From assembly GCA_002269645.1 (NCBI GenBank), contig NIVC01004363.1, forward strand, positions 1 through 48,462: 48,462 nt of DNA, written 5' to 3'. Below the pieces are notes generated by a model, which was not told the origin of the DNA, searched no databases, and was given only the letters and a program-made list of their open reading frames with translations. The DNA is from Macrostomum lignano (Eukaryota). Positions 1-48,462 of the stretch are shown here, one piece after another. Both the position numbers and the translations under genes were made by a program. Position 1 is the stretch's first letter; the number at the start of each line of letters is the position of its first letter.

Positions 1-1733
1 CGGATCCCATCTTCAAGAGTCGGGTATGCTGACGACGTCACTGCCATTGTGGCTGGCCGTCCCCCGGCAGCGCTCAGGGATCTGATGCAGAGCTTTATCC
101 GCAAAGCAGAATCCTGGCCAATGACAACGGTCTGGAACTCTCTGAGCCCAAAACTGTTGCCATTATGTTCAACAGCAGAATACGCTGGAACATACGACCT
201 CTGCAGTTATACGGCAGAGATATTGCCTTCGCGCATCAGACCAGATGTCTCGGGTCATACTTCTTGACCACCGGCTCAACTGGTCCTTCCACGTGAAAGC
301 AAAAGCGAAGCGTGCCTCAGCCATCCTGGCCCAGCTCCGACGAGCACTTTGGTGGATCTACACTTCCGTAGTTAGACCTGCCATTTTGTCTGGGTTAGCG
401 CTACCCAGGTCAAAAGCCATGCAGATTTGCTCAACACGATTCAGGGCAGAGCGTGTAGGCTCATCTGCAACGCCACCAGATCCACGCTCTTTGCCGGCAT
501 GGGGCCTTCCTTAATCTACCGCCTCTCGACCTCTTCGTCCATTCCGCTAATCCCTGAACGGCCGACGCGTATGGACGAAGGGTTGGCGCCGCCCAGGGAG
601 GTCCCCGTGTCGCCAGCAGCTATAGTGCTCTCTGGAAAGGAGAGTTCAGCCCTGCGGGTGGCCCGGAGGTAGCGCATGAGCTGATTAAAGTTTTCAGGTT
701 TGCACGCTTCAGTAATAGATGTGTGTGGCCCGAGGTAATTGAGTCTGGCTCACGTAAAGGCGGGACAGATGCTGACGAAATGCTCAGCGGTTTCGTCACC
801 TGAGTTACAGAAACTGCAGATGGCGTTGGTGGCATTGCCCTGCAGGTACTGGTGCCTAGAGAAGCAGCCGTGACCTGAGAGGGTCATGGTGGCAGCCCGG
901 ATGTCTTTGCGCAAGAGGCGCAAGAGGAGCTTCCGGAGCTGGTGAGAGGGCTGAGGGACAACGCCTCTGGATTGCCTGCAGGTGGCGCAGTTCGCCCAAG
1001 TCGAGCGGTGCTGGGTCCTGACTCCTGATCCACGCTTTGATGCGCGAGTTGATGACACAGCCAGGAATCGGGACAAGGGGTTCGGGACCGAGAGAGGAGC
1101 CGGAGGCGCCAACTTTAGCAAGGGCGTCAGCCAACTCATTTCCTCGGATCCCTACATGCCCGGAACCCACTTAAGGGTAATTTTGTTGGTGGAGCCCAAC
1201 ATGTTGAGGAGTTTGATACAGTCGAGGACTGTAGCAGAATTGGTACTACAGCCACTGATGGCGTGCAAGGCAGCTTGGCTGTCCGAATGGAAAATGATGT
1301 TCTTACCGGATACGCCAGTGGCGAGAAGCTCTGCAATGCAGGAGCTGATGGCGAGAACTTCATTTTGGAAGACACTGGAGTTGACCCCAGTGTACTGAGC
1401 GTGGGTTGCGATGACCCTCCCGTTCAGGAAGATTCCAACACCAAAACCGGTGTTGGCTGACTGCTTAGAACCGTCGGTGTAGCAATGAAGCTCACCAAGG
1501 TTCCATTGGTCATTGATGGTATCGCGCGAGTCGATAGCTACGGAGTAGCGTTGTCTCAGGTTGAGCATTGAGGCAATGCCATCGGTGAAGACGCGATTGG
1601 CCTGAAACTCGTTGAGAATGTTAAGGCACAGGTTGCTATGCGGGACGAGGTTCCGCTTAGCAGGTGCCCTCATGTAAAGGAATTTGACACTGGCATCAAG
1701 TAAATGCCGCATCATTCTAGCCGCCTCACCAGT
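1..1733. mobile_element. Decayed non-LTR retrotransposon with RT + RNase H + CCHC knuckle (I/R1/LOA-type). RT C-terminus on + (1-~540); RNase H and CCHC on - (~1733-541)
   Basis: + strand: GYADDV, ILDHRLNWSFHV, WIYTSVVRP, LNTIQGRACRLICNATRST, LNLPPLDLFV (frameshifted). - strand: GEAARMMRHLL, YTDGSK, SVFQNEVLAI, FHSDSQAAL, LKWVPG/GHVGIRGNELADALAK, CSFCNSGDETAEHFVSIC. Runs off the left window edge. Confidence 0.9.
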
Positions 1734-2535
1734 CCACTGTATCCTAGCAAAGGATCTCTATCTCCATTATGTTTACTTAGTCTGGGTGCCCTACAACCTC
1801 ACTGCAGACCAGCAACAGGCTTGTGTGAACTGCGCTTGAAGGAGATCTACAAGGTGTTTAGTAGTTGGGGCTTGAATAATATCTTAAACTGCTTGGTTAT
1901 TGAGGATGAAACCTAGTTCTACCTAGATGGCAAAGGCAGCAAGGCAGACAATTGCTGCTGGCTGGGAGCTGGGGACTCCAAGGTGACTGTGACAAGGAGG
2001 TCTATCTTGGACAAGAAGACTATGCTACTAGTGGCCTTTATGCCAAACAAATGAGTCTCTATCTGCATGCACAACACTGCCAAATACTAAGGTCAATGGT
2101 TAGTATTTTATTGACTTAGTCCAGCACACTAGGGATCTCTGGCAGTCTCTCTAGTCAAATCTAATTCATCTGGACAAGGTTCTATTGCAGATAGACAATG
2201 TATAGCCATATATCTATCTATAAGGCTGTTTAAGATTTTCTGGCTAGATGGCATTGGCAAGTGAATCTGTTCTGGCAAAGTCCATACAGCTTGGACTTCA
2301 ACTTGTATAATAGATTTCTGTTCAAATAGTTAAAGGCTGACTTTTCCAAGAGGAGTTTTACAAACCATGACAAGGTCAAAAAAGCTGTGTTGCACTAGTT
2401 CTAGCAGCTAGAGGTAAACCACTTGCAGGCTAAGGTAGAAAAGCTATATGAGCACTGCCAGAGAATGATTGATATTGGCCATTTGGGGGACAACTATGTT
2501 GTTGATTGATACAGTTTTGTTCATCTGCAATTGTA
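1732..2535 (+). mobile_element. 5'-truncated, heavily C>T-mutated Tc1/mariner transposase relic
   Basis: Degenerate motifs: WVPYNLT (WVPHxLT), VIEDET* (GDETW), LLQIDNV*PY at 2182-2211 (DNARPH), SPYSLDFNLYNRFLF at 2279-2323 (SPYSPDxxxCDxFLF). Nine premature stops plus frameshifts. Right TIR not confidently identified. Confidence 0.85.
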
Positions 2536-4334
2536 AGTTTGTCTATTTTCACATTAGTGACATTACTTATATCTTATGACATACCCAAAGTAGTTAATAA
2601 TTTTGCATTTAGATTACATAATGAATCTTTGTATGTTTTAAAGTAGCTATTGCATTAATTTAATTAAACTAATGTGATTTGCTATAATTGACTATATACT
2701 TTTTAGTTATAAATGTTCAATAAATTATAGATAAATTTTTATTGAGATTTTTTTTAAATGAAACCAAAGAATATTTATTGCAATGGGAAACATATTTAAT
2801 GACACAAAACTATTCAAAAACATAGCACTTGTTAGGTAGACAATGATATAATTTCAGTAGGTGGGTATGTATAGTGTAGGCGGATGTCCAGCCATCTAGT
2901 CACTACAAGCAATACTCAGAGACAATCAGTTGAAACTTACTGAGATAAAGCCACGGATTATAATAACTATATGAATATAATTAAAAATTAAAATTGAAAA
3001 TTAGTTCAAGATTAATCTAAAAATAATAATTATAACTAAACTAAATAGTTTTGTGTCACAAAATGTGTCTCTTATTGCAATAAGTATGCTTTGACATTCA
3101 TTTAAGTTGAAAAATAATTAAATGTGTGCTTCTTTTCAATTCTTAATATGTGCAAAGTGGCAGTGCCAGGATGCCAATTCTAGGATGTAATTCTTATATA
3201 AAAATAGGACACATTATTACTTATATAAAAATAAATAGCAATTAGCAGAATTGCTTTAATTCAATTGATGCTAGGCCTAATACTTATAATAGGGGGCCTA
3301 GTAATAATATTAGATAGTTGTCAGATATCAATATTTAAAAAAATGAGTTTGTTATCTTATCACTATCTCATTATAATATCATAACACAGACATTGTATTT
3401 AATATTCTGTGCCAGACGAAATGAATGCTGTATTTTTCAGATGAGAGAGTGGCAGACGAACTGGCATCAGATTCAGACGATTGAGGTTTGAGACGAATTG
3501 ACTGTCAAACTTTTAAGACCTTGGCCATAGCCCATAATCCCATATGATGTGATCTCACTGGAGAATACAGATTCTGGCCTTATGATGCTTAAAAGGAAGA
3601 GTTACTTTAAAATAGTTTAAGAGATATTTACTACAATAGCCATTTCAGAAGAAAATTACAAAAAAATCACACAAGAATTAGAAAGCTACATGGTATATGG
3701 TAATGGTAACATGGTATTTGGTTCAATACATATGCACAGTTGACAACTAAAAGTGTCGTATGTAAGGCATATTACTTTTACTCGTACATGGCAAAAAAGA
3801 GAAAGGTAATTTCTTAGCAAAATACGATCTGATCATTGCATTTTGTGCGTCTTAGCAATCCTGATTAAATCTGACGCCTACCATTTTCTTAGAACGAGCG
3901 TTTACCAAATTAGCGCTTTGTTGTCAGTGGTATAACAAAAGATGTTTATCTCTGACAAAGTTTAAAATTTTGCCTGATAATGCTGAAATTCATAAGAAAA
4001 TGCAGATTCATTAATAATTTAACCTAATGTTTGCTGAGTCTAGAAACTAGCGGAAAGCGAACTTCATGAAAAAAACAAGACTAGGTACTGGTAGGTGAAG
4101 CCTACAATTTATCGTAAAGCTCCCCCCAGTGGAAAACCTTTCCACTTCGTGTAATGCGTCATACTTTCCTTGCGTGGAAAGTCATTTTCCACCCAATTTA
4201 AAACGCGAACCCATCCCGTTAATTATATTTTAATGTGTACTATATGTACGTGCCATACAGTATATGCACATTGCACAATGTACATGTATATTATGCATAA
4301 TGTAATGTTATGTATCACCTACCAAAGGTACATG

Positions 4335-4660: not shown

Positions 4661-6060
4661 AAATTGGGTTTTACCCGGTGTTAATCGTCAACATCCGTAA
4701 CCCTTTCCCACCCGGTGGCTCATGGGATAAAAGAGTCTGCACTCGCCAGGGGGTCAGACTCGTGTGTAATTTGCCCCCCCCCCTGAACCCTTGTCTTAAA
4801 CTTCCAATACTCGAGGTCCCTACCTTTAAGTTCGAATTGCCTAAGTCCCGACCAGCTCCCTTCCGACTATAGCCATGGTACCTCTATTAACTTTTTTGAC
4901 ACTGCGTGAAATTAACCCTAATTAATAAACTTATAGCCTTAGCGAATTATCATCTGCGGAAGCGTAGCTAAAAGCGCTGTTTAAATAAACCAAAAGTTCT
5001 CTGGGACTTCGTGACCAGCTTGCATTGCATTTCCTGATCCATACATGTAGTGATCCAAAACTAAGAAGATTTCTCAGACTATAGTTCTATAGCTAAACCC
5101 AACTGTCTCAGGATTTTTTCCGCGCATCACCACAGCGTGGCAGCGACCTACTAAAAGTAAAATGTTAGGCAAATCTACTGCATTCAACTATTATGATAAA
5201 AAGATTACATTTTTATAAAATTACCCCCCCCCCTGGCCCTAGCATGTGCACAGCTAGTGCATACTCAAGTTGGTTTTTGTTTAAAGGGTTTGAGCTGTTT
5301 AAATTGCGTCACTCGAACTGATAAGTAGCCTACTAGCTGTTTTTGGTTATTTACATTAAATGTTGCTATTAGGTGCTGGCACAATATTGCACATCACACT
5401 CGGTGACTCAGTGGCACTAAGATCGAACTTTAGAAGAAACTTTATAGAAGTTCAAGACCTGTGGAACAGACTTACGCATATAGGTCGTGATCGTGAATAC
5501 AGATGAGCGTACATGTACGTACGTTCAATATTCAACCGCTTCATATAGTTTGAGCCAGAAAATGGAAAAAAATCACAGTACATATATATACCTTACGCAT
5601 CGAAAGGCATATCTGTTGTTAGCAACATGCAATGTTGGGAGAGGGAGAGAGGGAGGGAGAGAGAGAGGTTACATTAGCTGAAGCACACTCCGTCTTACTG
5701 TGCCAATTCGCGCGCCACTGAACAATAGCTAAGAAGGCGGGGACTGCGCGAGTACTGGGGGGGGGAGGGCGTGAATTGCAACTCAGCTGCCCAAAGCTTG
5801 CAGCCCCCGAATGGCATAACCAATATTGTATTAAACTTCTAGCGAAAGCCTCACTTGAGTGGCTGTGGTAGAGCCAGGAATATATTTAACCGAAGAAAAT
5901 TGTGCACTTGGGCTATATGCGTCGCATTCATTGAGCTACACATAGTCGCAAGTTTTGCTGTGCCACCATAGTAACAAAACAATTTATTGGATTGTTTTGC
6001 TTCATTTATAAGATAAGCATAACAGAAAAAGCGAATATTTACCAATTATTGAACTGGCAA

Positions 6061-8596
6061 ATGGCTCCAGTTTGCAGCTGCATGAAAACGGCCCTCCGTC
6101 ATCTCTGCAACCGAATGCAGAGCAATCGCTTGCAGGCCAGAGGTCTGCGCCAACACCTGCTGTTATCCTTGCCGCTAATCGCTGCCATTGTGCTGCTCAT
6201 TGTCCTGTTGAACCAGCTATTCTCAAGCATAGAAGAGCTCTCTGTTGAGCTGCACCCGGACCCTGAGCTGCCGCAGTCGGAGCTAAAAGAGATTGCTGAA
6301 AGATTCTCTATTTCGAAATTGGACCAGAGTCACCGCATAATCAGCCTGCCAGTGACAAAGAAAATTCATTTCATGTACAAAGGCTACAAGCTGGATGTCC
6401 ACTTCGCTCCGCTGCTCAAGTCTTGGAGGTAAGACTGAGTATGTCGTTACAAGTATATACATTCCAGTTCAAGTGCAAATTAGTCAATCAGAGCGCATCT
6501 CAATATAAATGACTATAATGCACTTGACTGCTGAATCATTGCATTTCGATCATGGCTACTGAATGCCACCCAGCACACACGTATCGAACTGACCGAGTAA
6601 ACCATTTTCAATCACAATTTTCTCTTGCCAGAAAGGTGTACCCAGAATACAGAATGTACTTTTGGACGGACGATGAGATCGACCTGCTGATTAGTCGGCG
6701 TTACCCAGCCTGGCAGGACATGTACACCTTCAATCTCTCCAACTACATGGAGCGGTCGGACACCGCCAGAGCCTTCGTGCTGCACGCCATTGGCGGCTGG
6801 TACGCCGACCTCGACACCGGCTGCCTGAGCCGGGCGGACGGGTACGCAGCCAGACACGCTTTGATCTTACCGCTGGAGCCCTACCTGCACGCGCTGAACA
6901 ACTTCCGTATGCGCCGGTTGGTGAGCAACGCCATCATGTACAGCGCTCCGGGTCACCCGTTCTGGATGTTCTACCTGGAGCTCCTGCGCGAGTCGCTGGT
7001 CGGCAAGGAGTCTCGAACAAGTACAACGCAGGCGGCGGGCACAACGGGACCTGTGCTTCTTACTCACTGCACGCATATCTTCCAGCAGGTGGGTTGGCCG
7101 GCGGCTATTTATTGTGAAAGTCTAAATGGGAGCATGAGTTGCCAGTCTTGAATATCTTGAATAGCATTGTCCTGCACTCACTCACAGATAGCTCGTTGCA
7201 GCCAGCATTTACAGTGATCTCTATTGTCTGCCTCTGTACTGTAGCTGGCGCCTCCTCTGTAGCTGGCGCCTCCTCTGTAGCTGGCGCACCCCCCTCTGTA
7301 GCTGGCGCCTCCTCTGTAGCTGGCGCCTCCTCTGTAGCTGGCGCCCCCCTCTGTAGCTGGCGCCTCCTCTGTAGCTGGCGCCCCCCTCTGTAGCTGGCGC
7401 CTCCTCCGTAGCTGGCGCCTCCTCTGTAGCTGGCGCCCCCCTCTGTAGCTGGCGCCTCCTCTGTAGCTGGCGCCCCCCCCCCTCTGTAGCTGGCGCCTCC
7501 TCTGTAGCTGGCGCCCCCCCTCTGTAGCTGGCGCCTCCTCTGTAGCTGGCGTCTCCTCCGTAGCTGGCGCCTCCTCTGTAGCTGGCGCCCCCCTCTGTAG
7601 CTGGCGCCTCCTCTGTAGCTGGCGCCCCCCTCTGTAGCTGGCGCCTCCTCTGTAGCTGGCGCCTCCTCTGTAGCTGGCGCCCCTCCGTAGCTGGCGCCTC
7701 CTCTGTAGCTGGCGCCCCCCTCTGTAGCTGGCGCCTCCTCTGTAGCTGGCGCCCCCCCTCTGTAGCTGGCGCCTCCTCTATAGCTGGCGCCCCCCCTCTG
7801 TAGCTGGCGCCTCCTCTGTAGCTGGCGCCCCCCCTCTGTAGCTGGCGCCCCTCTGTAGCTGGCGCCCTTCTCTGTAGCTGGCGCCCCCTCTGTAGCTGGC
7901 GCCCCCTCTGTAGCTGGCGCCCCCCTTTGTAGCTGGCGCCCCCTCTGTAGCTGGCGCCCCCTTTGTAGCTGGCGCCCCCTCTGTAGCTGGCGCCCTTCTC
8001 TGTAGCTGGCGCCCCCTCTGTAGCTGGCGCCCCCTCTGTAGCTGGCGCCCCCTTTGTAGCTGGCGCCCCCTCTGTAGCTGGCGCCCCCTCTGGCTCTGTA
8101 GCTGTAGCTGAAAGTGAAATATGAAAATGTGAAAAGTGAAATTTTCACAGACAATTTCTTGCCGAATTCGTCAGCTGTCATTGCTGTCATCCTATATACT
8201 AAAAATGAAAATTAATTTACTAAACTTGCATCGCAGGCCAACAAAGACCGGGGCTGCCCGGGCTCCTGGTGTCCTCATCTGCCCCCGCCGGTGAAGTTCC
8301 TGCCTCACTACGATGACAGCTTTGAGGAGACGCGGCAGACGTTTTGGAGAATGTGCACCAGCCTCCGGCTCAGGAAACAGTTCGACAGCAGACAGTTTGA
8401 GGACGAGTGCAGGCGGCTCGAGGCGCACGAGTACCTCAATGCCCCGCTGGACCCCACCGAGTCGCACACCTATCACGAGTTCTATCACCTGAACGAGAAG
8501 AAGAGTGACGCTGGACGACAAAAAGTCGACGCGCGCAAATTGGGTCTCGACTTTGTGCTTGGCAACAGTCTGGTTGCCGAAATAGAGAAACTGTAA
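6061..8596 (+). CDS. GT32/DxD sugar-binding glycosyltransferase (SUR1/OCH1-like, type II membrane), paralogue 1; join(6061-6428,6632-7088,8237-8596), 394 aa
   Basis: N-terminal TM (LLLSLPLIAAIVLLIVLL), KIHFMY, YFWTDDE, ERSDTARAFVLHAIGGWYADLD, SNAIMYSAPGHPFW, TGPVLLT. GT-AG introns in phase 2 and 0; total 1185 nt is a multiple of 3. Confidence 0.88.
7239..8104. repeat. Minisatellite, ~18-bp unit GTAGCTGGCGCC(T/C)CCTCT, in GT1 intron 2
   Basis: Direct reading of the tandem array; unit length varies in the C-run. Confidence 0.95.
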
Positions 8597-9763
8597 CAGT
8601 TCAAAGAGCTCTTTTCTTCTACAGAACCGCTTTCTCAACTTTATCTGAGCCAACGTTTGCGGTCAATTAACCCCCAGAGAAGGGTGCGGATATGGGAAGG
8701 CATAACGTAAGCTACAGATTAATACTCAAGTCTGTATTCCTCCATCATCTAGGGGCGCCTCCCAAGGGCATTTTCGGATTGAGGAGCCACCAATTCCACT
8801 TTGAGAGCCTTCAACTTGACCTCATGAATTGCTCATTTTTTATAACCATTACAATTAGGCTTTAACACTGGCTCTGCTGCTTGATTTCGAAATGTATTTT
8901 TACATTGTCCTTTATGAGTATTAATAAGTGCGGGCACTTGAACTTCGATGCTTACTGCTTGTTATTCCATTATTATCAGTAGCTTAAGTAAACAGATATA
9001 ATATATTTTGTTCTTATGCTTAATGCGCTTCATTGTGAAGAGAATTAGTACGAACCGGAGTTTTGGTGTGGCCTCAAGTTCTTGCATCAGAGTGGCATCA
9101 AAGCTGTTTCCCAGGATACAATATTGGCCGATGTAGGTTAATGTTTTTATCAGCAGCGTCAAGCTTGTAGTAAACGAGTGGAACTCCTCCTTCGGAGAAG
9201 AGAGGGGAAGAACTCCCATCACCGGAATTCCATTCCCTGAAATCCATCAGCTGAAACTCCATGACTTGAATCCCATCTTCCAAATCATCTTCAAATCCTC
9301 TGTAAAGCCTGTAAAGCGAGCAAAATTAATGCGACCCAAGCGCGCAAAAACCGCAACTTTAACGACTGAGACAGAAGTGCCGATGTACTGATGAACGCGG
9401 GGAAGAACAGGTGTGCACTTCTTTTGACACCGAGCCCAAAACCCCGACATCACTGGCGATCTGACTCTAGGGAAACAACTGTGGGCCAGAAGCTTCAGCA
9501 GCCAGTGTCTACTCTCTGGCCCAAAAAGCACTGCGGCCGATGAGCGGTTGAAGACCACTGCATGTCTTCAACCTGCTGATGACAGCCTGGCAGAAGAGAA
9601 TCCAGCAGCCTCAGACCTCGGCATGCCCTGCCGGTCAGAAGTGGCGAGCCCTCCCTATTGTGAGAAGCCCCACCCACCCAGGTAGAACTGCACTGACAAT
9701 AAGCCCGTGTGTCTTATTATTCTATTTCAAGCTACAACACTCAGATGCGGCTTGTGCCACTGA

Positions 9764-11593
9764 CAACAACAACAAAATACGCTGTCAACCAGTTAAAGCT
9801 AGTCAATCGAGGCAAGCAAAAACAACGTCACAGGGCGCATTTCAGGGCCTCGGCGCGAACGTAGGCCGCACCGCCTACCGCCTCCGGCTTGGATGATATG
9901 GCCTGGAGTAACAGTTGGCGCAACAGTTCGCTGGGACGGGACAGGCCGGTGCGGCGATAGAGTGCCGCATCGGTAACTCGCTCGTAGCCGATCTTGTAGG
10001 CGGCGCGCAGCAGGCCAGCGTGCGCCGCATCGACCTGCTATTCGAGCGACCCCGTCAGGGTCCAGGTCTCGGCGTTGTACGACAGCACGGTCTACTGTTG
10101 TACAACAGGGTGGTCTCAATCACCGCCTGGAACAACGCCGTCCTCTGGCGGTCAGGCAGGGCTGCCCAGGCAAGCCCACGGCGTCGTCGCAGGTCCTCGT
10201 GAACGTCAGGCACGAGACCGAAAGTAGACGAACTGCTGATAGCACGGGAGCTTCGTCACCTGTCCGTCGGCTCCTCGGCAGAAAACTGCAGCCTCGATGT
10301 CGTCCGGCACGCAGAGCACGACGGTCTTCTGCATGTTGACCACCAGGCCGACACTCACCGCAACGCTCACCAGCCGGTCCAGCTGCGTTGGGCTCCCTCG
10401 ACGGTCGAGGACAGCAGGGCGAGATCATCGGCGTAGCCCAGCACGCTGAGCCGCCTTTCCGGTTGGCGTCGATCCCCGCGTCGCTGCAACAGGAAGCCGT
10501 CGTCGTTAGAAGGGACAGCAGTTCGTAGCACCCAGTCAAGCACCAGGACGAACAGGAACGCGCAAGCTTATCTCCCTGAAGCACCCCACAGGATGTCTCA
10601 AAGAAATCCGACAGGCCGTTCGGTGTTAGCACAGCAGAGTTCGTGCCGTGATACAGCGCCATGACGGCGGAGATCAGCTGCTCTGGTACGTTGTACGCAC
10701 GAAGCACCATTGGGAGCACGGCCCTCATGACCGAGTCGAAGCCTTCCTAAATCTATGAAGATAACAATCAGGATCTACTGGCGTGTCCGCGCTTCCTCGA
10801 TGACTCGGCGAAGAGCCAGGATCTGAGCCACTGTGCCGCGGTGGGGCGGGAACCCGTTCTGCTCAGGACGCAGGTACGACGCAGCTTCTAGTTGAACAGC
10901 TTCGCTACGCAGAACTGCAGACAGATACCTCGGTACTCCTCAAGCCACGTGGTGCCCGGCTTCTCCGGAACGGCGACGATGTACGCCGTGGTCCATTCGT
11001 TGGGTGCCGCCTCACCGAAAAGCGCGCAGTTCATCACGCTGGCGACCTCGCTGGCCACACAGTGGATGCGCAGCGCCTCGATGAGCATCTCGTCCGGACC
11101 CAGCGTTTTGCCGCCCAGAGTCTTCTAGGTGAGCATCACAACGTCGGCTGTGCTGAATGGTGCTACATTGAGACTCTTCTCTGTCGGTAGTGGCGTCCCC
11201 GGCGGCAGCCTCAAATCGTTTAGCAGCGGGGGCGGCGCCGCGTTGACGATGGCGGCGAGGAACTCGCGCAGTTCATTTCTGCGCTCATCCAGAGTATCGC
11301 CAGCCAGGCTGAGCGGGATGCGCCGCTTCCGCCCGGTCAGAGCATTGATGGTGGACCAGGCCACGCGCCCTTTGGTATCGGATCCAGCGGCGGTGACGGC
11401 CTGGATGACGTCGTCAATAGCGGCCTGTCGTCGATGCAGGTAGACAGCCGCCAGAGCATCCTCCGCCTCACGAGTTGGCCGCCTGCTCAGACGGAGCCTC
11501 TCCAGCTCTGTTCTCGCTTGCCGAATCGCAGGTCCATGTACTCGGGGCCACCCGCAGCAGTCACCAAGCGCGCTGACGAATGCACTAGCAAAA
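9764..11593 (-). mobile_element. 5'-truncated, decayed RTE-type LINE (RT and C-terminus)
   Basis: EWTTAYIVAVPEKPG, EYRGICLQ, EQNGFRPHRGT, GVLQGD, LGYADDLALL, IETTLLYN on the - strand with frameshifts. (TTG)3 3' tail at 9764-9775. Possible 11-bp TSD with one mismatch: TGCCACTGACA 9755-9765 and TGCTACTGACA 11594-11604. Homologous to the copy at 35455. Confidence 0.88.
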
Positions 11594-12895: not shown

Positions 12896-14897
12896 ATGTG
12901 GCTCGTCATCGACCGACGGTGCTCGCTCCGCAAGCTGGCCGGAGCGCTGCTGCTCATCGCCGCGCTCATCTCCACCCTGCTGCTCTCGGCGAGCTTCTGG
13001 ACGGGGCTGATCTGGCTGCTGCCGGAGCCGCTGCTGGCGCCGGCCGAGGCGCTCAGGATTGCCAGGAGTTACCCGCTGCCGCCTGCCAACCAGTCGTTGA
13101 CGCTGGCCGAGCTGCCGGTTGTGAAGCGAGTCCACTTCATGTACCGCGGGTACCGAATGAAGGAGCTGTTCAGAGTTCTGCTGGCGTCCTGGCGGTGAGT
13201 TGAATCTCTCCCTGATGCTTGTGGCATCTTGTGACCTATGTGTATCACATGCAGTGAGAGATAAGACAGCGGCCATAAGTTACAATTGATCGCTTCATTT
13301 TGTCTATTTTGCAATTAATAAATTTAATGTCAAGTAAGCGTGACAATAGTGACTGCAATCGAAATAGTACGCGGTGCGCTTACAGAGACTATCATCTCTT
13401 TCAATACTTGCCGACCACATTTTCATCGTTGATCACAGAAAGGTGTACCCGGACTACCAAATGTACTTCTGGACGGACGATGAGATCGACCTGCTGATTA
13501 GTCGGCGATACTCAGCCTGGCAGGACATGTACTACCGACAGCTGTCCAACTACATGGAGCGGTCGGACACCGCCAGAGCCTTCGTGCTGCACGCCATTGG
13601 CGGCTGGTACGCCGATCTCGACACCGGCTGCCTGAGCCGGGCGGACGGGTACGCAGCCAGACACGCTTTGATCTTGCCGCTGGAGCCCTACCTGCACGCG
13701 CTGAACAACTTCCGTATGCGCCGGTTGGTGAGCAACGCCATCATGTACAGCGCTCCGGGTCACCCGTTCTGGGTTTTCTACCTGCAGCGCCTGCGCGAGT
13801 CGCTGGTCGGCAAGAAGCCGAGGCAGAGCACTATGCAAGCCGCGATGGTCACCGGCCCGGTGCTGCTGACCAACGTGGCGCTCACCTTTCAGCAGGTGCG
13901 CGGCAGTAAGCTCTCATTCTGCTTCTCTCCATAGCCTGTGCAGGCGGCTCCATATTGGACAAAAAGTTTGAACCCATGATATCCTAAGTAGCGAGCGTCA
14001 AAGTACGGTGGTTCGATTCTATTCGTGACCACATCAATTTCGGGCGATTTTCATCGTGCGACTTCCGCCAATGTGGGCCAATTTCTAAGGCACAGAGGGT
14101 GTACATGACTGGCAAAGACAATGTCAGGGCTGCTGTACATCTTGTGTGTGAGTGCTGTGCCTGTGTGTGCACCTCTGCGGGCGGTCTCAAAGTTCAGCAG
14201 AACGGACTGCTTGCATCCTCCTCACTGACTCTGGACCCGCCAGTTGATTTGCATTGAATGATAACTTGCTAATATAGGTTGTCAGCGCAATTTTCTACGT
14301 TCGTTTCTTTAAAGCCGGGGATAGCACCACAACACGTCAGCGACATATCGTCGAGACAGTCGGTTCACTTTTCCAGACCGACCTGCCTCATGCTGTCATT
14401 TTATAATGACTGTCCTCGATAAGAGCTACTGCGGAAGCTGCAGGCACCCTATCGGCGAAGGCGCATTCCAAATTTTTTTGCTGCCTTTGTCAATTATTCG
14501 TTATGTTTCAAACCGAAGCCACCAACCTCCGCAGGCGCACAGCGGAAAGGGCTGCCCCGGTCTCTGGTGCCCGCACTTGGCCCCTCCGCAGCGATTTCTT
14601 CCTGTGTACGACAACAGCACGGTGGAAATGCGGCAGTCGTTTCGGCAGCTCTGTGACAGCGTCTTCGCCCTGCAGATTGTTGGCTTCGCCGAGGAGTGCC
14701 GGCGGTTCGAGCCGCACGGCTACCGGAACTACCGACTGGACCCGGACCAGTCTTGCACCTTCCACGCCTTCCTGCACCTGAACCAGCGGGCCAAAGACGC
14801 CGAACCCGAGGCCGACGTGCGCGACTGGGGCCTCGGCCTGGTCGTCGGGGATGAACTCGGGGCAGAAATTCGGCAGCTGGGAATGGGGGACGGGTGA
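12896..14897 (+). CDS. GT32/DxD glycosyltransferase, paralogue 2; join(12896-13194,13439-13895,14535-14897), 372 aa
   Basis: Same exon structure and phases as paralogue 1 (exon 2 is 457 nt in both). TM LAGALLLIAALISTLLL, RVHFMY, GGWYADLD, GCPGLWCPHL. Total 1119 nt. Confidence 0.88.
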
Positions 14898-15080
14898 CTC
14901 ACCTGTAGAAGGATTCCTATTGCTTCCATGTACTGCCGCTCCAGGTCTCAACTTACTGCTTCCATTGGAACTTTTGCCTGAATCCGATTGCCGCAAGCTT
15001 CTCATTTAGCAACTATTTGAAATACAATTCAAAGCATTTGTAAGCCAACGGCTTGCCTTGCAATAAGTGTCTTGCAATTT

Positions 15081-16151
<1,071 letters not shown>

Positions 16152-17158: not shown

Positions 17159-35052
<17,894 letters not shown>

Positions 35053-37860: not shown

Positions 37861-37921
37861 TTAATTAGTAGATTCGTTGCTTTAGGCATGGGGAAGCCCT
37901 GCAGGGTCATGCGCTTCAGTA

Positions 37922-39216
37922 CGAGGGGCGTACTGAAAGTTTTGAGATACGGCTGACTCATAAGTCAGAACTGCACGAATTTTTACATGCATACTCTACC
38001 ACCTTTAAGAGGATTGAGTATTAATTTTCAGCCTTTGCGGTCTTGTCAATTTTTCACAATCTCTCTTTAAAGTCAATACCCCCTACCAAACTGTATTTGC
38101 TCCAATGGAGTTGGCAAACCGCGACTTTCATGCTATGATGGTTTATAGTCAGTGAAAAGGTCTTGCGTAGGAGCAGTGCGTTGAAAGTTTACATGCTGCC
38201 TTTGGAGACCAAGCCCCTTTACGTGCCACAGTTATTTGGTGGTACAGCGAATTTAAGTGGGGCCAAAGCCGCCTTGATGATGAACCCCAGACGGGACGTC
38301 CAGCTTCCGCTGTCACGGACGAAAAAATCGCTGCTGTCCGGAGAATGATTGACGAGGACCGGCGAGTGACCTGTGAGAAGATGAGAGAGGCTCTCGGCAT
38401 TGGATCGGCAGCGGTTACGACCATCCTGCACTCAAGCTGGGAGCCTCCAAGCGATGTGCCCGCTGGGTGCCCCACAACCTGGAGGAGGACCAGAATGCGG
38501 AGAGGGTGCGTTGGTGCGAGTTCCTACTCGAAAGATTCGATTCTGGGACCTTGAAGTGATGCTGGGAGATCATCAGTGGCGATGAGACCTGGGTCTGCCA
38601 GTGCGACCCGGAAACCAAGCAGCAGTCGGCAGTTTGGCTCCTCCCGGACGATGCCACCCCAACGAAGGTCAAGCGTCGGGAAGCAGATGGTGGCGGCTTT
38701 CTTCAGCCAGGCCGGCCACCTGGCGACTGTAGCGTTCCAAAACAGGTGGCCAGTCAATGCCGACTGATATACCAACCAGTGCCTGCCGCTCGTGTTCGAT
38801 GCGTGGCGCAGACGCCGGCCGCGCACCGGACTTTGTGGCCTGCTGCTGCACCACGACAACGTCAGTGCGCACGCGCCTGCTGCATCTTTGGCAATTCTGG
38901 CCGAGAATGGAGCTTAGTTGGTGACGTATCCCACATATTCCCTGCCCTGGCACCCTGCCACTTCTTTCTCTTCCCTTTGGAGAAGAACCAACTGCGTGGG
39001 ACTCAGTTTGAGAGTCCTGAAGCAGCAAGAATCGAGTTCGAGTGGGTGGTTTCAGCAGTGCCAGAAGAACAGTGGGCTGGAGCCTGAACGCAGTGGTTTC
39101 ACCGGATAAGGAAATGCGTGCAAGATGTTGACAACTACTTTGAAAAATTGTGACAGAAATTTTGGTTCAGATATTTGTGGTTTCGGCGTATCTCAAAACT
39201 TTCAGTACGCCCCTCG
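37922..39216 (+). mobile_element. Full-length (1295 bp) mariner, D,D34D-type transposase pseudogene
   Basis: Perfect 30-bp TIRs CGAGGGGCGTACTGAAAGTTTTGAGATACG (37922-37951, 39187-39216) with TA duplication on both sides. ORF from ATG 38105 (MELANRDF), WVPHNL, ISGDETW, LHHDNVSAH, LAPCHFFLFP, with stops and frameshifts. Confidence 0.96.
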
Positions 39217-39284
39217 TATAAGAGCTATTTCTTGCAGCTCTCCATGTTTCCCTGTGGCTCACAGACACTTGCCAGCCCTGCTGC

Positions 39285-40101: not shown

Positions 40102-40616
<515 letters not shown>

Positions 40617-45700: not shown

Positions 45701-47693
45701 CAGGCTGAGCATGGACTCAAGAAAGTACAAATTGTTGATGCGGCCGCTGGCATTCAGCAGGTGAAACAGGATTTCCGTCTCGTCTCTTGATTGAAGGGAC
45801 GCGAGGGCTTGGATTGAAATCTCAAATCTTAATTATGATCACGTGACCTAAATCTGAATCCCACAGTCCTTCAGAAACTGAATCCCACAGTCCCGAATCT
45901 GAATCCCACAGTCCAGAATCTGAATCCCATAGTCCCGAATCTGAGTCCCACAATCTCGAACCTGAATCCCCTAGTCCCGAAGCTGAATCCCCTAGTCCCG
46001 AATCTGAGTCCCACAATCTCGAATCTGAATCCCCTAGTCTTCTCGAATCTGAATCCCCTAGTCCCGAATTTGAATCCCAGAGTTCCGAATCTGAATCCCA
46101 CAGTCCCGAATCTGAATCCCACAGTCCAGAATCTGAATCCCATAGTCCCGAATCTGAGTCCCACAATCTCGAACCTGAATCCCCTAGTCTTCTCGAATCT
46201 GAATCCCCTAGTCCTGAATCTTAATCCCATAGTCCCGAATCTGAATCCCAGAGTTCCGAATCTGAATCCCACAGTCCCGAATCTGAATATCATAGTTCCG
46301 AATGTAGATCCCACAGTCCCCGATATAGATCCCACAGTCCCGGGTGCAGATCCCAAGTTTCATACTCTTAACCCCACAATACTAGCAAAAAACATAAGCA
46401 ATTAAAAATATCCTCCACGGGGGGATCTCGCACACTCACTCAAAACAGGTGGAAATTCCCGCCAGCTTGGGGTGGTGAAATTTCCCCCGATACCGCTGCA
46501 TCAGGCATTCGACATCGCGTATAACAAAGTCGCGCGATTTCAATTGCAGCTGGTGTGGCGCCTGCTGGGCGGCTTGCGATTGCTGCTGCTGGTTCGGCGC
46601 CAAGGACTGCGAAGCCAGAGCTGCGTAGACGTCCATGAGATCCAAGCGGGCCTGAACGAACTCCACAAGTTGGTCGCTGACGTGGCTGACCAGCTTGGCC
46701 GAGGAGGCCCGAGAGACTCGCTGCAGCTCGGCGGACAGGCACCGGTAGGACTCGCGAAGGTTCTCCTTGCGAACGGTGAAGATCGGCGCCCGGGACTGCA
46801 GGTAGGAGAGGCTGTAGTAGGACTTTTCGTGTGAGCACAGCTCCGAGCAGGCGTTAAGGAAGGCGCGCCAGTTCGGCGACAGCACGGATTTGTTCTGGTC
46901 CAGCTCTTTGTCCTGCGGGTCAGTGAGTTAGTGAGTGAGTGAGTGAGTGAGTGAGTGAGTGAGTGAAGGGGGCCGTAGCCCAGCGGTAGCGCAGCTGCTC
47001 TGGTGTGCCAGCGACCCAGGCTCGATTCCAAGTGCAGTCACATTAATTTGGGGCTGAATTGGAATCTCGGCTTGGCTCTGCTCGTGCAATTAACGGCCTC
47101 GAGAGCCAACCCCCCAAGGCACAGTGAAGTGTACATGCCTAACGATAAAATAAAGTTAGGGCCGCTGTACACTCCTGTGTGAGTGTGTGCCTGCGTACGT
47201 ATCCGCGCGCTTGTATGCCTGCTCAGGGGAGTCGGCGGAATGGGCAGTAATGCCTCTCGCCGGTTGTGTGCCTATGTCGCTTAAAGTGCGACAGGGTGCA
47301 CACAACCCCTCTGCCTCTAAAAAAAGAGTGAGTCAGTCAGTCAGTCGGTGAGTCAGTCAGTGAGCCAGTGAGTCAGACAGTCAGTCAGTGAGTTGGTGCA
47401 TTTTTTTATGCATTTCTATTAAGTCTACATCTACATATCTACAGTCTCTTCATCCCACAACAATGTCCATCCTAGGCTAATTTAGCTTTGCTACATGTAA
47501 ATGGGGGTTTTATGCCAACTTGAGGCTTTAGACTATAGCAAAGAACAGGTATCCCTGGTCACCTGAGCCAGGCTGCTGGACTTACAATGATCTCCTTTGC
47601 TTTGTCAAAATGAAGAAATCGCAATGCTTCACTGAAAGAGTCCAAACTGGACCTTTCCACAAACTTTAAGTTGCCAGAGCCAAATTCTGCCAG
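40629..47693 (-). CDS. KICS2: KICSTOR subunit 2 (C12orf66) orthologue; complement join(47693-47586,46912-46440,45785-45650,42021-41566,40892-40629), ~478 aa, start codon unresolved
   Basis: Colinear similarity to human C12orf66 as I recall its sequence: [18 protein letters not shown] (LETFFSHLGIFSYDKAKD), [11 protein letters not shown] (AEKVYHSLTYL), [18 protein letters not shown] (LSHLSEQLCFFVQARMEI), KFHHPKL (RFHHPIL), YLGHGYYLP (FQGHGYHHP), [10 protein letters not shown] (FYDDKVQSTY). Phases 0,2,0,0 are consistent. An alternative in-frame acceptor exists at 42048. Confidence 0.9.
41035..41495. repeat. 21-bp minisatellite AAAGTTATCCCAACTCAATTC in KICS2 intron 4
   Basis: Direct reading. Confidence 0.94.
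42105..43005. repeat. 32-bp minisatellite TTAGTGTCTGTCTGCCTGTCTTAGTGTCCGCC merging into (TCTG)n, KICS2 intron 3
   Basis: Direct reading. Confidence 0.94.
43780..44330. repeat. 27-bp minisatellite CAGCATCCTTCATCATTCAATCTGCTA, KICS2 intron 3
   Basis: Direct reading. Confidence 0.94.
44712..45200. repeat. ~22-bp minisatellite GATGAAGGTGACTCAGTGAGTT, KICS2 intron 3
   Basis: Direct reading. Confidence 0.93.
45850..46340. repeat. 21-bp minisatellite GAATCTGAATCCCACAGTCCC, KICS2 intron 2
   Basis: Direct reading. Confidence 0.94.
46924..46966. repeat. (GTGA)n at the acceptor end of KICS2 intron 1
   Basis: Direct reading. Confidence 0.9.
47327..47392. repeat. (AGTC)n-like microsatellite in KICS2 intron 1
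   Basis: Direct reading. Confidence 0.85.
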
Positions 47694-48462
47694 TAAGAAA
47701 ATTTAATGCAATGGTTAATTGGCATGTATTGCAAGTTTGGGATTTCTTCTAGTAGGCTTTATGCAAGCAAGATTACTAAAGGAAGCTAAAAACAAAAAGG
47801 TATAAGGCTAGTTGTATAGGTAATCAAAGCTCTACTAATTTTTTTATTATCTAAGCTTTTGTTTTTAACTAAATAACAAACTACATAATTTTTGCATGTC
47901 AAATGTTTGACATTATTACCTAGGCTATAGTAAGGAACTCTAATGTCATAAAAATGATAATAATTTTAAAGTAAGCTTTTGGTACCTAGTGCCTTAATGG
48001 CTTTTTAAACATTAAAAAAACATTTAATTTCTAAATAATATTGATTTTTTCTAGACTACATTATTAAAAATTATTTTTTTAATTTTCAAGTTCATAGTTT
48101 ATTTATTAATTTAAAAATTCCAAATAGGTTAAGCTTAAGTTAGTTACTTATAATAATTAAATAGGTCTTTATAGACAAGCTTTTTATTGTCTATAAACAA
48201 TTAATTGGCTTTAAGTAGAGGGGAAATCCAAAAATCGGGGGCAAGTTTTATGAAAATTCGTTTTTTGGCAATTTGAAAGCAATAAAGCTATAAAATAAAT
48301 TTATTCAAGTTTTTAAAAAAGTAAAAAAGTCTATTAAAGCACAAATTATTTTCGTATAGCTTTATTTTTAATAAAAATGATTTGTTAAAATGGTAAGTTT
48401 AATTACGACCTAAAATGAGTCTAATGAAAATGATTGAAAAGCTATAATAATGTATTTTATTA

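What the first reader, a model, noticed from the sequence alone, without database searches (positions are those of the whole stretch)
1732..2535. RIP-like CpA/CpG C>T hypermutation of a mariner relic in an animal-type genome
Seen: nine premature stops in the transposase frame (TAG at 1914, 2101, 2152, 2203, 2327, 2396, 2402; TAA at 2231; TGA at 2052). Only 1 CpG occurs in 1741-2880 by manual count. Motif lesions read as DNARPH>DNV*PY, WVPH>WVPY, DETW>DET*, LCD>LYN and (inferred) M>I (ATG>ATA). Inferred: every stop fits CAR>TAR, TGG>TAG, CGG>TAG or CGA>TGA, i.e. C>T on either strand at CpA and CpG, driving sequence toward TpA. Established: CpA>TpA is the hallmark of fungal repeat-induced point mutation, while ordinary 5mCpG decay gives TpG/CpA and stops there. 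The adjacent LINE and the second mariner (37922-39216) keep abundant CpG and mostly TGA stops, so the process looks targeted. This could be an undescribed transposon-inactivation system (dense CpG plus non-CpG methylation, or a deaminase).
Basis: partly seen in the sequence, partly recalled or inferred. Interest (0 to 1): 0.82.

Follow-up and report, generated by a model that had tools for sequence, protein, structure and literature searches.

The report
C-to-T-decayed mariner in methylated-looking flatworm tract
A dead mariner transposon in the flatworm Macrostomum lignano really has been eroded almost only by C-to-T changes, but it sits in a 1.7-kb CpG-free, AT-rich stretch of host DNA that shares the CpG loss, so local germline DNA methylation explains it better than a fungus-style anti-repeat mutator.

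Summary
All nine premature stops lie in the transposase frame, and there are 3 CpGs in 1723-3416 against about 47 expected.

Of 107 relic-specific substitutions, 86 are C>T or G>A. Per-site rates are CpG 0.67, CpA 0.295, CpC/CpT about 0.10 and T>C 0.02. The changes are strand-symmetric and spread evenly along the relic. All 18 shared ancestral CpGs are gone.

Two controls in the same window show no CpG or CpA hypermutability: the second mariner and an 82%-identical repeat pair. The C>T excess is therefore real and local.

It is not aimed at the transposon or at repeats. The CpG-free tract runs 824 bp past the mariner's TIR and TA site into host DNA. Neighbouring repeats are untouched. Similar CpG-free AT-rich tracts occur at the window's other end and in another M. 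lignano locus, one of them in an intron of a housekeeping-type gene.

M. lignano keeps DNMT1 and DNMT3. The best reading is mosaic germline methylation followed by deamination. The excess of non-CpG C>T is not fully explained. The stop-codon argument is circular.

The parts
1729..2591 (+). Relic of a DD34D mariner-like transposon, corresponding to residues about 121-370 of intact relative P0001 plus the 3' UTR and 3' TIR. It carries 9 premature stops, 5 insertions in the CDS (three of them frameshifting) and a third catalytic D changed to N. GC is 41% against 54% in relatives, CpG count 1 against 33, and TpA count 70 against 15.
   Evidence: Pfam DDE_3 match is weak.
2552..2591 (+). 3' terminal inverted repeat of the relic. 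The family TIR is GTGACATTACTTATGACACACCCAAAG. The relic copy carries a 7-bp tandem duplication and one C>T.
   Evidence: by comparison with the TIRs at both ends of L002, L004 and L005.
2592..2593 (.). TA target-site dinucleotide next to the TIR. Original host insertion-site DNA begins here.
2592..3416 (.). Host flank that shares the CpG loss. GC is 25.5%, there are 2 CpGs (o/e 0.15), and TpA o/e is 1.00. It contains a 50-nt inverted repeat pair (2765-2814 / 3044-3093) that brackets both CpGs.
1723..3416 (.). The whole CpG-depleted, AT-rich tract: 3 CpGs against about 47 expected. The left edge is the LINE junction. The right edge is sharp at 3417, where 4 CpGs occur in the next 80 bp.
650..1728 (-). 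5'-truncated non-LTR retrotransposon (RNase H domain and C-terminal Cys/His knuckle) whose 5' end abuts the mariner and removes the mariner's first third. Its ORF is largely intact and CpG o/e is 0.75, so it is younger than, or exempt from, the C>T process.
37920..39218 (+). Control: a second, unrelated mariner (Transposase_1 type) with perfect 32-nt TIRs and a balanced spectrum. C>T is 6.8% per C and T>C 5.1% per T. C>T is 9.2% per site at CpG, 9.0% at CpA and 4.4% at CpY.
9919..11532 (+). Control: one copy of a GC-rich repeat (62% GC, CpG o/e 1.1). Its partner lies inverted at 36010-37620, 82% identical. C/T differences are flat across contexts: CpG 10.5-11%, CpA 6.5-7.2%, CpC/CpT 7.5-14%.
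47400..48236 (.). Second CpG-free, AT-rich tract in the window (616 bp with no CpG, GC 29-40%). No transposon relic was detected in it.

Best explanation
The window comes from the free-living flatworm Macrostomum lignano.

Proposed history. A GC-rich (about 54%) DD34D mariner inserted at a TA inside an AT-rich stretch of host DNA. That stretch belongs to the small CpG-depleted compartment of this genome. The compartment is inferred to be methylated in the germline by the DNMT1/DNMT3 machinery the species retains. 5-methylcytosine deaminates to thymine on both strands. This removed every CpG of the element and of its flank. Together with an AT-biased regime in this tract, it converted about a quarter of all C/G of the element to T/A. 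That AT-biased regime could reflect lower-level non-CpG (CpA-favoured) methylation, faster deamination in easily melted AT-rich DNA, or the absence of the GC-favouring fixation seen in the GC-rich repeats. The result was TpA dinucleotides and stop codons. The mariner is a passive passenger in a regional state, not the target of a repeat-sensing defence. Later a 5'-truncated LINE inserted and cut off the mariner's first third.

Shown: the substitution spectrum and its context, its strand symmetry, its locality, the extension into host flank, the untouched neighbouring repeats, and the recurrence of such tracts in host DNA.

Inferred: that methylation is the cause, that non-CpG cytosines are also modified or otherwise deamination-prone, and the order of events.
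For: Host identity. Window exons are 99% identical to an M. lignano UniRef protein. M. lignano retains DNMT1 and DNMT3 and has low-level 5mC, with the genomic pattern undescribed (PMC11292947, PMC9246332, PMC10658182).

Spectrum against intact relatives:
- 86 of 107 relic-specific changes are C>T/G>A.
- Per-site rates: CpG 24/36, CpA 28/95, CpC 6/65, CpT 9/81, T>C 6/308.
- Changes fall at codon positions 1, 2 and 3 at 16%, 12% and 25%, which indicates neutral decay. The intact relatives show 3.6/0.9/18.6% and 7.4/5.0/32.5%.
- All 18 shared ancestral CpGs were hit: 9 became TG, 3 CA and 6 TA.
- C>T (48) and G>A (38) are balanced, p=0.24. They are interleaved, runs test p=0.68. There is no gradient along the element.

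Locality. Relic 2 and the repeat pair show no CpG hypermutability. Their transversion 'ages' are similar to the relic's: 2.3% for the relic, 3.1% for relic 2 and 2.75% per branch for the repeat pair.

Not element-specific. The tract continues 824 bp beyond the TIR and TA site.

Mosaic pattern. 12 of 139 non-satellite 300-bp windows have CpG o/e below 0.35, in four tracts, against a main mode of 0.7-1.2. One tract starts at exon 1/intron 1 of a CDC5L-like Myb gene in another M. lignano contig.
Against: - CpG-only methylation does not explain the non-CpG excess. At codon positions 1+2 there are 58 C>T, 1 T>C and 7 transversions, against 15, 7 and 16 in relic 2.
- Non-CpG C>T is about 3-6 times what the controls predict for the same transversion age.
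- The implied GC-to-AT versus AT-to-GC per-site bias (8-fold or more outside CpG) would give an equilibrium GC below the flank's 25.5%.
- The trinucleotide preference (CCA 12/26, ACA 5/19, GCA 7/28, TCA 2/13, CAA 1/18) does not match what I recall of DNMT3 non-CpG motifs. That recollection was not checked.
- No methylation data for this locus were available.
- No gene overlapping the tract could be identified.
- This is one locus with 107 polarised substitutions.
- The control relic 2 has perfect TIRs, so its changes accrued in a mobile non-autonomous lineage at several locations.
Confidence: 0.5

Rival explanations
1. An active, targeted C-to-T hypermutation system operates in an animal. It would be RIP-like, or dense all-context methylation of a marked region, or a DNA deaminase recruited to it. 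It mutated the tract in one or several bursts.
For: - The spectrum is almost purely C>T/G>A: 86 of 107 overall and 58 of 66 at codon positions 1+2.
- CpA is about 3 times CpC/CpT, p=2e-4.
- TpA rose from 15 to 70, and TpA/ApT from 0.50 to 1.08.
- The tract is sharp-edged and AT-rich.
- By transversions the relic is no older than unaffected repeats nearby.
- The non-CpG excess is unexplained by CpG methylation alone.
Against: - The defining property of RIP, action on duplicated DNA in general, fails. The LINE fragments, the second mariner, an 82%-identical repeat pair and 24 tandem arrays in the same 48 kb keep CpG o/e of 0.75-1.1 and flat spectra.
- 824 bp of flank with no other copy in the window or L012 are affected, as are transposon-free host tracts.
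- CpG is hit at least as hard as CpA.
- (CpA+TpG)/(ApC+GpT) stays at 1.40.
- C>T and G>A are interleaved at short range, unlike single-strand deaminase clusters.
- RIP is described as fungus-specific in the papers found (PMC2621366, PMC7882544).
Confidence: 0.17
2. Ordinary neutral ageing. The tract is simply old AT-rich DNA drifting under a generally AT-biased mutation process. The GC-rich repeats look different because they are young or are kept GC-rich by GC-biased gene conversion. No cytosine modification is involved.
For: - A fixation bias of B about 1.5-3 in the GC-rich controls would reproduce the roughly 3-6-fold higher CpC/CpT C>T and the 0.4-0.5-fold T>C in the relic (calculated).
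- A GC-rich element placed in 25% GC DNA must lose GC.
- Relic 2 also hints at C followed by a purine being more mutable than C followed by a pyrimidine: 17/187 against 8/180.
Against: - 18 of 18 CpGs lost, against about 10% for CpC/CpT, needs a CpG-specific process.
- Controls of equal transversion age show none.
- AT-rich M. lignano DNA with CpG o/e of 1.0-1.4 is common, so AT-richness alone does not deplete CpG.
- The B needed to explain everything implies a mutation bias of about 20:1, far above what is usual in animals (my own general knowledge).
Confidence: 0.12
3. The tract did not evolve where it now lies. It would be an assembly chimera, contaminant DNA, or a segment that acquired its composition in another genome or compartment.
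For: - Both edges are sharp.
- The only intact relatives found come from unidentified read sets and metagenomes.
- No other copy of the family or of the flank occurs in the 64 kb of M. lignano DNA examined.
Against: - The left edge is a typical 5'-truncated LINE junction.
- The mariner has a proper TIR plus TA joint with the flank.
- Compositionally identical tracts lie inside native M. lignano genes in an independent contig.
- Relatives have the GC (53-54%) typical of the repeats in this window.
Confidence: 0.06

Closest known systems
Mosaic (invertebrate-type) germline CpG methylation leaving CpG-depleted, AT-enriched domains through 5mC deamination
   Same: Complete CpG loss to TpG/CpA, strand symmetry and sharp domains. 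CpG o/e is bimodal (below 0.2 or about 1) in host DNA. One tract lies in a housekeeping-type gene body. The host has DNMT1 and DNMT3.
   Different: A large excess of C>T also occurs outside CpG (CpA 0.295, CpC/CpT about 0.10, against T>C 0.02). No gene could be assigned to this tract. The methylation pattern in free-living flatworms has not been described (PMC9246332).
Fungal repeat-induced point mutation (RIP)
   Same: A nearly pure C:G>T:A spectrum, a CpA preference over CpC/CpT, strong TpA gain, many stop codons, an AT-rich tract with sharp edges, and spill-over into flanking DNA.
   Different: It is not repeat-induced, because other repeats in the window are untouched and sequence with no other copy in the sampled DNA is affected. 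CpG is at least as mutable as CpA. CpA+TpG is not depleted. The host is an animal without the fungal life-cycle stage in which RIP operates.
AID/APOBEC editing footprints in vertebrate retroelements
   Same: Dense C>T/G>A changes in a transposable element.
   Different: Here C>T and G>A are interleaved and balanced, with no strand-coordinated clusters. The dependence is mainly on the 3' neighbour, with a weak 5' effect. The element is a DNA transposon and the host flank is included.
Deamination-driven isochore model (faster C deamination in AT-rich, easily melted DNA; Fryxell and Zuckerkandl, cited from memory)
   Same: A regional, self-reinforcing C>T bias in AT-rich DNA affecting all contexts.
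   Different: There is no gradient towards the AT-rich flank within the element. The size of the effect here is larger than I recall being reported.

Membership tests
Tc1/mariner superfamily, DD34D mariner-like | DDE/D transposase with D..D..(34 residues)..D, and the DNARPH and SPYSPD motifs | tested here: met
   The relic is 68% identical over 257 aa to intact P0001 (E=2e-101). P0001 has 34 residues between the D of DNARPH and the D of LCD (counted). Precomputed Pfam domains are HTH_32 and DDE_3. In the relic the third D is now N.
Tc1/mariner superfamily, DD34D mariner-like | Terminal inverted repeats flanked by a TA target-site duplication | tested here: met
   The family TIR is seen at both ends of L002, L004 and L005. 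The relic's 3' TIR ends at 2591 and is followed by TA. The 5' end has been removed by the LINE.
Repeat-induced point mutation (RIP) | Mutations almost exclusively C:G>T:A | tested here: met
   86 of 107 polarised changes, and 58 of 66 at codon positions 1+2.
Repeat-induced point mutation (RIP) | Dinucleotide preference, classically CpA>TpA | tested here: inconclusive
   CpA at 0.295 exceeds CpC/CpT at about 0.10 (p=2e-4), but CpG at 0.67 is highest. Control relic 2 also shows a roughly 2-fold, non-significant excess for C followed by a purine.
Repeat-induced point mutation (RIP) | Acts on duplicated sequences generally, and only on them plus short leakage | tested here: not met
   The LINE fragments, the second mariner, the 82%-identical repeat pair and the satellites in the same window are unaffected. 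Transposon-free host tracts share the CpG depletion.
Repeat-induced point mutation (RIP) | RIP indices: TpA/ApT high (0.89 or more) and (CpA+TpG)/(ApC+GpT) low (1.03 or less). Thresholds are cited from memory. | tested here: inconclusive
   TpA/ApT is 1.08, which meets the first threshold (0.50 in the intact relative). The second index is 1.40, which fails, and it is unchanged from 1.37.
Repeat-induced point mutation (RIP) | RID/DIM-2-type machinery acting before meiosis | not testable with these tools
   The host genome and proteome could not be searched here.
Germline 5mC CpG decay in a mosaic methylome | CpG-specific hypermutability giving TpG/CpA, on both strands | tested here: met
   18 of 18 ancestral CpGs were hit (9 TG, 3 CA, 6 TA). 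C>T is 48 and G>A is 38.
Germline 5mC CpG decay in a mosaic methylome | Two classes of host DNA, CpG-depleted and CpG-normal, with sharp domains | tested here: met
   12 of 139 windows have o/e below 0.35, in four tracts, against a mode of 0.7-1.2. Only 64 kb were sampled.
Germline 5mC CpG decay in a mosaic methylome | Host encodes DNMT1 and DNMT3 and has 5mC | not tested
   Taken from the literature only: PMC11292947, PMC9246332 and PMC10658182, all citing Wasik et al. 2015, which was not held.
Germline 5mC CpG decay in a mosaic methylome | The tract is actually methylated in germline cells | not testable with these tools
   No methylome data were accessible.
Germline 5mC CpG decay in a mosaic methylome | Non-CpG cytosines mutate at the background rate | tested here: not met
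   Non-CpG C>T is about 3-6 times the rate in controls of equal transversion age.
AID/APOBEC-type DNA editing | Strand-coordinated clusters with a 5' TC or CC context | tested here: not met
   Runs test p=0.68 and strand balance p=0.24. The 5' neighbour effect is weak: CC 0.35, TC 0.22, GC 0.20, AC 0.15.

The most novel reading that the evidence does not exclude
M. lignano marks discrete kilobase-scale tracts with a cytosine modification or deamination activity that acts in all sequence contexts, in the order CpG, then CpA (especially CCA), then CpC/CpT. This drives nearly pure C-to-T hypermutation of whatever lies inside, transposons included. It would be a region-targeted, not repeat-targeted, animal analogue of methylation-coupled mutagenesis.
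Probability: 0.2. Interest if true: 0.8.

Novelty: new member of a known kind. Interest (0 to 1): 0.45.

Why it matters
The genomic pattern of DNA methylation in free-living flatworms is undescribed (PMC9246332). M. lignano is the flatworm model named in those reviews as retaining DNMT1 and DNMT3.

This locus, and three similar tracts in 64 kb, suggest that its genome carries a sharp mosaic of CpG-depleted domains. That gives a sequence-only map of where the germline is probably methylated. The locus also shows that a GC-rich transposon landing in such a domain is destroyed about five times faster, almost only by C-to-T changes.

If the non-CpG component proves general, it would point to non-CpG methylation or another regional deamination process in a spiralian germline. 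If it does not, the finding is an ordinary methylation footprint.

It also gives a warning about method. Stop codons alone will always look 'RIP-like'.

Tried and rejected
- Relic 1 against relic 2. blastn and tblastx found no similarity, so they are different families.
- Rfam (gathering thresholds) and ARAGORN over the window found nothing.
- Two metagenome-contig scans for more relatives of the relic. The first found none. The second found only 51% and 33% relatives, too distant for DNA polarisation.
Stop-free stretches there showed nothing recognisable.
- A look-up of the window's LINE ORF, meant to extend the locus leftwards and find the mariner's 5' half, found nothing on record.
- A search for other copies of the flank or of the other CpG-free tracts in window+L012 found only an internal inverted repeat. 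The spectrum could therefore not be replicated at a second locus.
- Wasik et al. 2015 (the M. lignano methylation data) is not held.
- A plant-like symmetric CWG methylation was rejected: CAG 10/34 against CTG 2/34.
- A UV signature was rejected. The three CC>TT tandems are about what chance gives at this C>T density, by my own rough estimate of about 1.4 expected, and UV damage would not be local.
- Mis-polarisation as the source of the skew was rejected. Parallel T>C in both relatives would account for about 1-2 sites (my own rough estimate). The skew is stronger at codon positions 1+2, where the relatives are constrained.
Full report
**What is there**

Window 1729-2591 (+) is the C-terminal two-thirds of a mariner-like transposon.
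- A stitched translation finds two intact relatives: P0001 (370 aa, 68% identity, E=2e-101) and P0002 (353 aa, 63%).
- Both carry HTH_32 and DDE_3 domains. They have the DETW, DNARPH and SPYSPDFNLCD motifs, with 34 residues between the last two catalytic aspartates.
- Their DNA, fetched as complete elements of about 1.3 kb, aligns to the relic without difficulty: L001-L003 at 79.3% identity and L004-L007 at 72.5%.
- The family's terminal inverted repeat is visible at both ends of the fetched elements.
- In the relic the 3' repeat ends at 2591 and is followed by the TA target site at 2592-2593.
- The first third of the element is missing. At about 1728 it abuts the 5' end of a minus-strand, 5'-truncated non-LTR retrotransposon with an RNase H domain and a Cys/His knuckle.

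**Host**

- Two glycosyltransferase gene copies in the window match Macrostomum lignano proteins. One match is 99% identical over 121 residues.
- Reviews state that M. lignano retains DNMT1 and DNMT3 and has low-level 5mC.
- They also state that the methylation pattern of free-living flatworms is unknown (PMC11292947, PMC9246332, PMC10658182).

**Check of the observation**

- All nine premature stops are at the stated coordinates and in the transposase frame defined by the alignment.
- Eight of the nine arise from C>T or G>A. Three are TGG>TAG, one is CAG>TAG, one is CGA>TGA, and three are CGR>TAG with both bases of a CpG changed.
- The TAA at 2231 aligns to TCC/ACG and does not fit the scheme.
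- There is one CpG in 1741-2880.
- The CpG-poor tract is wider than reported. It spans 1723-3416 with three CpGs, against a mean of 47 and a minimum of 29 in shuffles.

**The stop-codon argument is circular**

- Among transitions, only C>T or G>A can turn a sense codon into a stop.
- CAR>TAR and TGG>TAG are CpA contexts by the structure of the genetic code.
- The six stops of the control mariner arise the same way (read from the alignment).
- An unbiased spectrum was therefore needed.

**The spectrum**

Changes were polarised by requiring both intact relatives to agree. This gives 107 relic-specific substitutions:

| Class | Count |
|---|---|
| C>T or G>A | 86 |
| T>C or A>G | 6 |
| Transversions | 15 |

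Per-site C>T rates by context:

| Context | Changed / sites | Rate |
|---|---|---|
| CpG | 24/36 | 0.67 |
| CpA | 28/95 | 0.295 |
| CpC | 6/65 | 0.09 |
| CpT | 9/81 | 0.11 |
| T>C, for comparison | 6/308 | 0.02 |

- CpA exceeds CpC+CpT with p=2e-4. CpC+CpT C>T exceeds T>C with p=2e-4.
- Changes fall on codon positions 1, 2 and 3 at 16%, 12% and 25%. The intact relatives show 3.6/0.9/18.6% and 7.4/5.0/32.5%. The relic's changes are therefore mostly neutral decay.
- Restricting to positions 1+2, where polarity is safest, sharpens the skew: 58 C>T, 1 T>C and 7 transversions.
- C>T (48) and G>A (38) are balanced and interleaved: p=0.24 for balance and p=0.68 on a runs test.
- There is no gradient along the element.
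- All 18 ancestral CpGs shared by the relatives were hit: 9 are now TG, 3 CA and 6 TA.
- The TA fraction (6/18) matches the independent CpA-context rate, so no coupled double event is needed.
- TpA rose from 15 to 70.
- The CpA+TpG count barely changed, because losses to TpA are refilled from CpG. The index (CpA+TpG)/(ApC+GpT) is 1.37 in the intact relative and 1.40 in the relic.
- Among trinucleotides, CCA is highest outside CpG (12/26) and CAA lowest (1/18). Numbers are small.

**Controls in the same window**

Second mariner (37920-39218):
- It belongs to an unrelated family and was compared with an intact relative 81% identical in protein, using a more distant one as outgroup.
- Its spectrum is balanced. 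C>T is 6.8% per C and T>C is 5.1% per T.
- C>T is 9.2% per site at CpG, 9.0% at CpA and 4.4% at CpC/CpT.
- At codon positions 1+2 it shows 15 C>T, 7 T>C and 16 transversions.

GC-rich repeat pair (9919-11532 and 36010-37620):
- The two copies are inverted and 82% identical.
- C/T differences are flat across contexts: CpG 10.5-11%, CpA 6.5-7.2%, CpC/CpT 7.5-14%.

Age comparison:
- Transversion divergence is similar in all three: 2.3% for the relic, 3.1% for the second mariner, and 2.75% per branch for the repeat pair.
- The relic is therefore not simply older.
- It carries about five times more C>T overall than the controls predict.
- By context the excess is about 10-fold at CpG, 4-5-fold at CpA and 3-6-fold at CpC/CpT.

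Caveat:
- The second mariner has perfect 32-nt terminal repeats.
- It is probably a recently moved non-autonomous copy whose changes accumulated at several locations.

**Not aimed at the transposon or at repeats**

- The CpG-free tract continues 824 bp past the TIR and TA site into host DNA (GC 25.5%, two CpGs). It ends sharply at 3417.
- The adjacent LINE, the second mariner, the repeat pair and some two dozen tandem arrays all keep CpG.
- A second CpG-free, AT-rich tract lies at 47400-48236, with no transposon relic detectable.
- I fetched 16 kb of another M. lignano contig (L012, NIVC01003032.1). It has two more such tracts.
  - One begins right after exon 1 of a CDC5L-like Myb gene.
  - The other is 1.4 kb long and lies within the same gene range.
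  - Both sit among AT-rich DNA with CpG o/e of 1.0-1.4.
- With satellites masked, 12 of 139 windows of 300 bp have CpG o/e below 0.35, all within these four tracts. The main mode is 0.7-1.2.
- This is the two-class pattern expected of a mosaic methylome.

**Interpretation**

The most economical account is a regional germline state that makes cytosines in this tract prone to deamination. The mariner is a passenger in it.
- Complete, strand-symmetric CpG loss is the classical footprint of 5mC.
- The host has the enzymes.
- The same footprint occurs in ordinary host DNA, including a housekeeping-type gene body.

CpG methylation alone does not explain the large non-CpG C>T excess. Possible contributors:
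- non-CpG methylation;
- faster deamination in AT-rich DNA;
- GC-biased fixation in the GC-rich controls.

A fixation bias of B about 1.5-3 would reproduce the CpC/CpT and T>C differences. However, it implies an implausibly strong underlying mutation bias if it has to explain everything.

A RIP-like defence is disfavoured because its defining property, action on repeats as such, fails in this very window. A single-strand deaminase burst is disfavoured by the interleaved C>T and G>A. A chimera or foreign origin is disfavoured by the proper TIR-TA joint, the typical LINE junction, and the native tracts in L012.

**Verdict**

There is a real, local, C>T-specific decay with the order CpG, then CpA, then CpC/CpT.
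- It is probably a methylation footprint of a known kind in a species where that pattern has not been described.
- It is not a transposon-sensing mutator.
- The non-CpG component keeps a moderate chance of something new.
- The evidence rests on one locus.

Noticed in passing
window 1-1728: Two non-LTR retrotransposon fragments lie tail to tail. A plus-strand reverse-transcriptase piece (YADD motif at the very start of the window) runs to about 560. A minus-strand RNase H plus Cys/His-knuckle piece runs from about 1728 down to about 650. It could be two insertions or one rearranged element.
   Followed up: partly
window 2765-2814 and 3044-3093: A 50-nt inverted repeat pair, 84% complementary and 229 nt apart, lies inside the CpG-free flank. 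It brackets the only two CpGs of that flank (2881, 2954). It may be a small foldback or MITE-like insertion.
   Followed up: no
window 1837, 2064, 2211, 2249, 2477, 2566: Every small indel of the relic relative to its intact relatives is an insertion, with no deletions. Most are 4-7-bp tandem duplications (TGCA, ATCT, TGGCA(T/A), CTTAT..).
   Followed up: partly
window 5990-8650 and 13370-14900: Two paralogous copies of a DXD-motif glycosyltransferase gene (Pfam Gly_transf_sug in the M. lignano homologue P0006). Their shared exon is about 95% identical. The first copy holds an 18-bp minisatellite of 46 units (7239-8092) between exons.
   Followed up: partly
window 15080-16151, 22905-23357, 29467-31310, 40108-40616: Very long tetranucleotide arrays: (TATC)268, (AGAC)113, (TGTC)463 and (GACA)131. 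About twenty minisatellite arrays with 11-64-bp units are also present. Tandem repeats occupy roughly a third of the window.
   Followed up: no
window 37920-39218: The second mariner has perfect 32-nt terminal repeats including TA, despite six stops and three frameshifts. This suggests a non-autonomous copy that moved recently with help from another copy.
   Followed up: partly
window 9919-11532 and 36010-37620: An inverted pair of a GC-rich (62%) repeat with CpG o/e of 1.05 or more, 82% identical. It contains a reverse-transcriptase-like ORF at 10120-10728. CpG shows no excess mutability here.
   Followed up: partly
window 47400-48236: A second CpG-free, AT-rich tract at the far end of the window (616 bp without a CpG). 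Like the first tract it is rich in GGCC/AGCC-type motifs.
   Followed up: partly
L012 9073-9596 and 13893-15338: CpG-free, AT-rich tracts lie inside a CDC5L-like Myb gene of another M. lignano contig. A CpG-normal segment between them holds a 680-aa minus-strand ORF. This is the same old-tract, CpG-normal-insert mosaic as in the window.
   Followed up: partly
L001-L007: Intact copies of the relic's family are identical in coding sequence across three and four independent read sets or metagenomes. They assemble as contigs of about element length, and L002 runs exactly from TA to TA. This looks like a recently active, multi-copy element in an unidentified organism.
   Followed up: no
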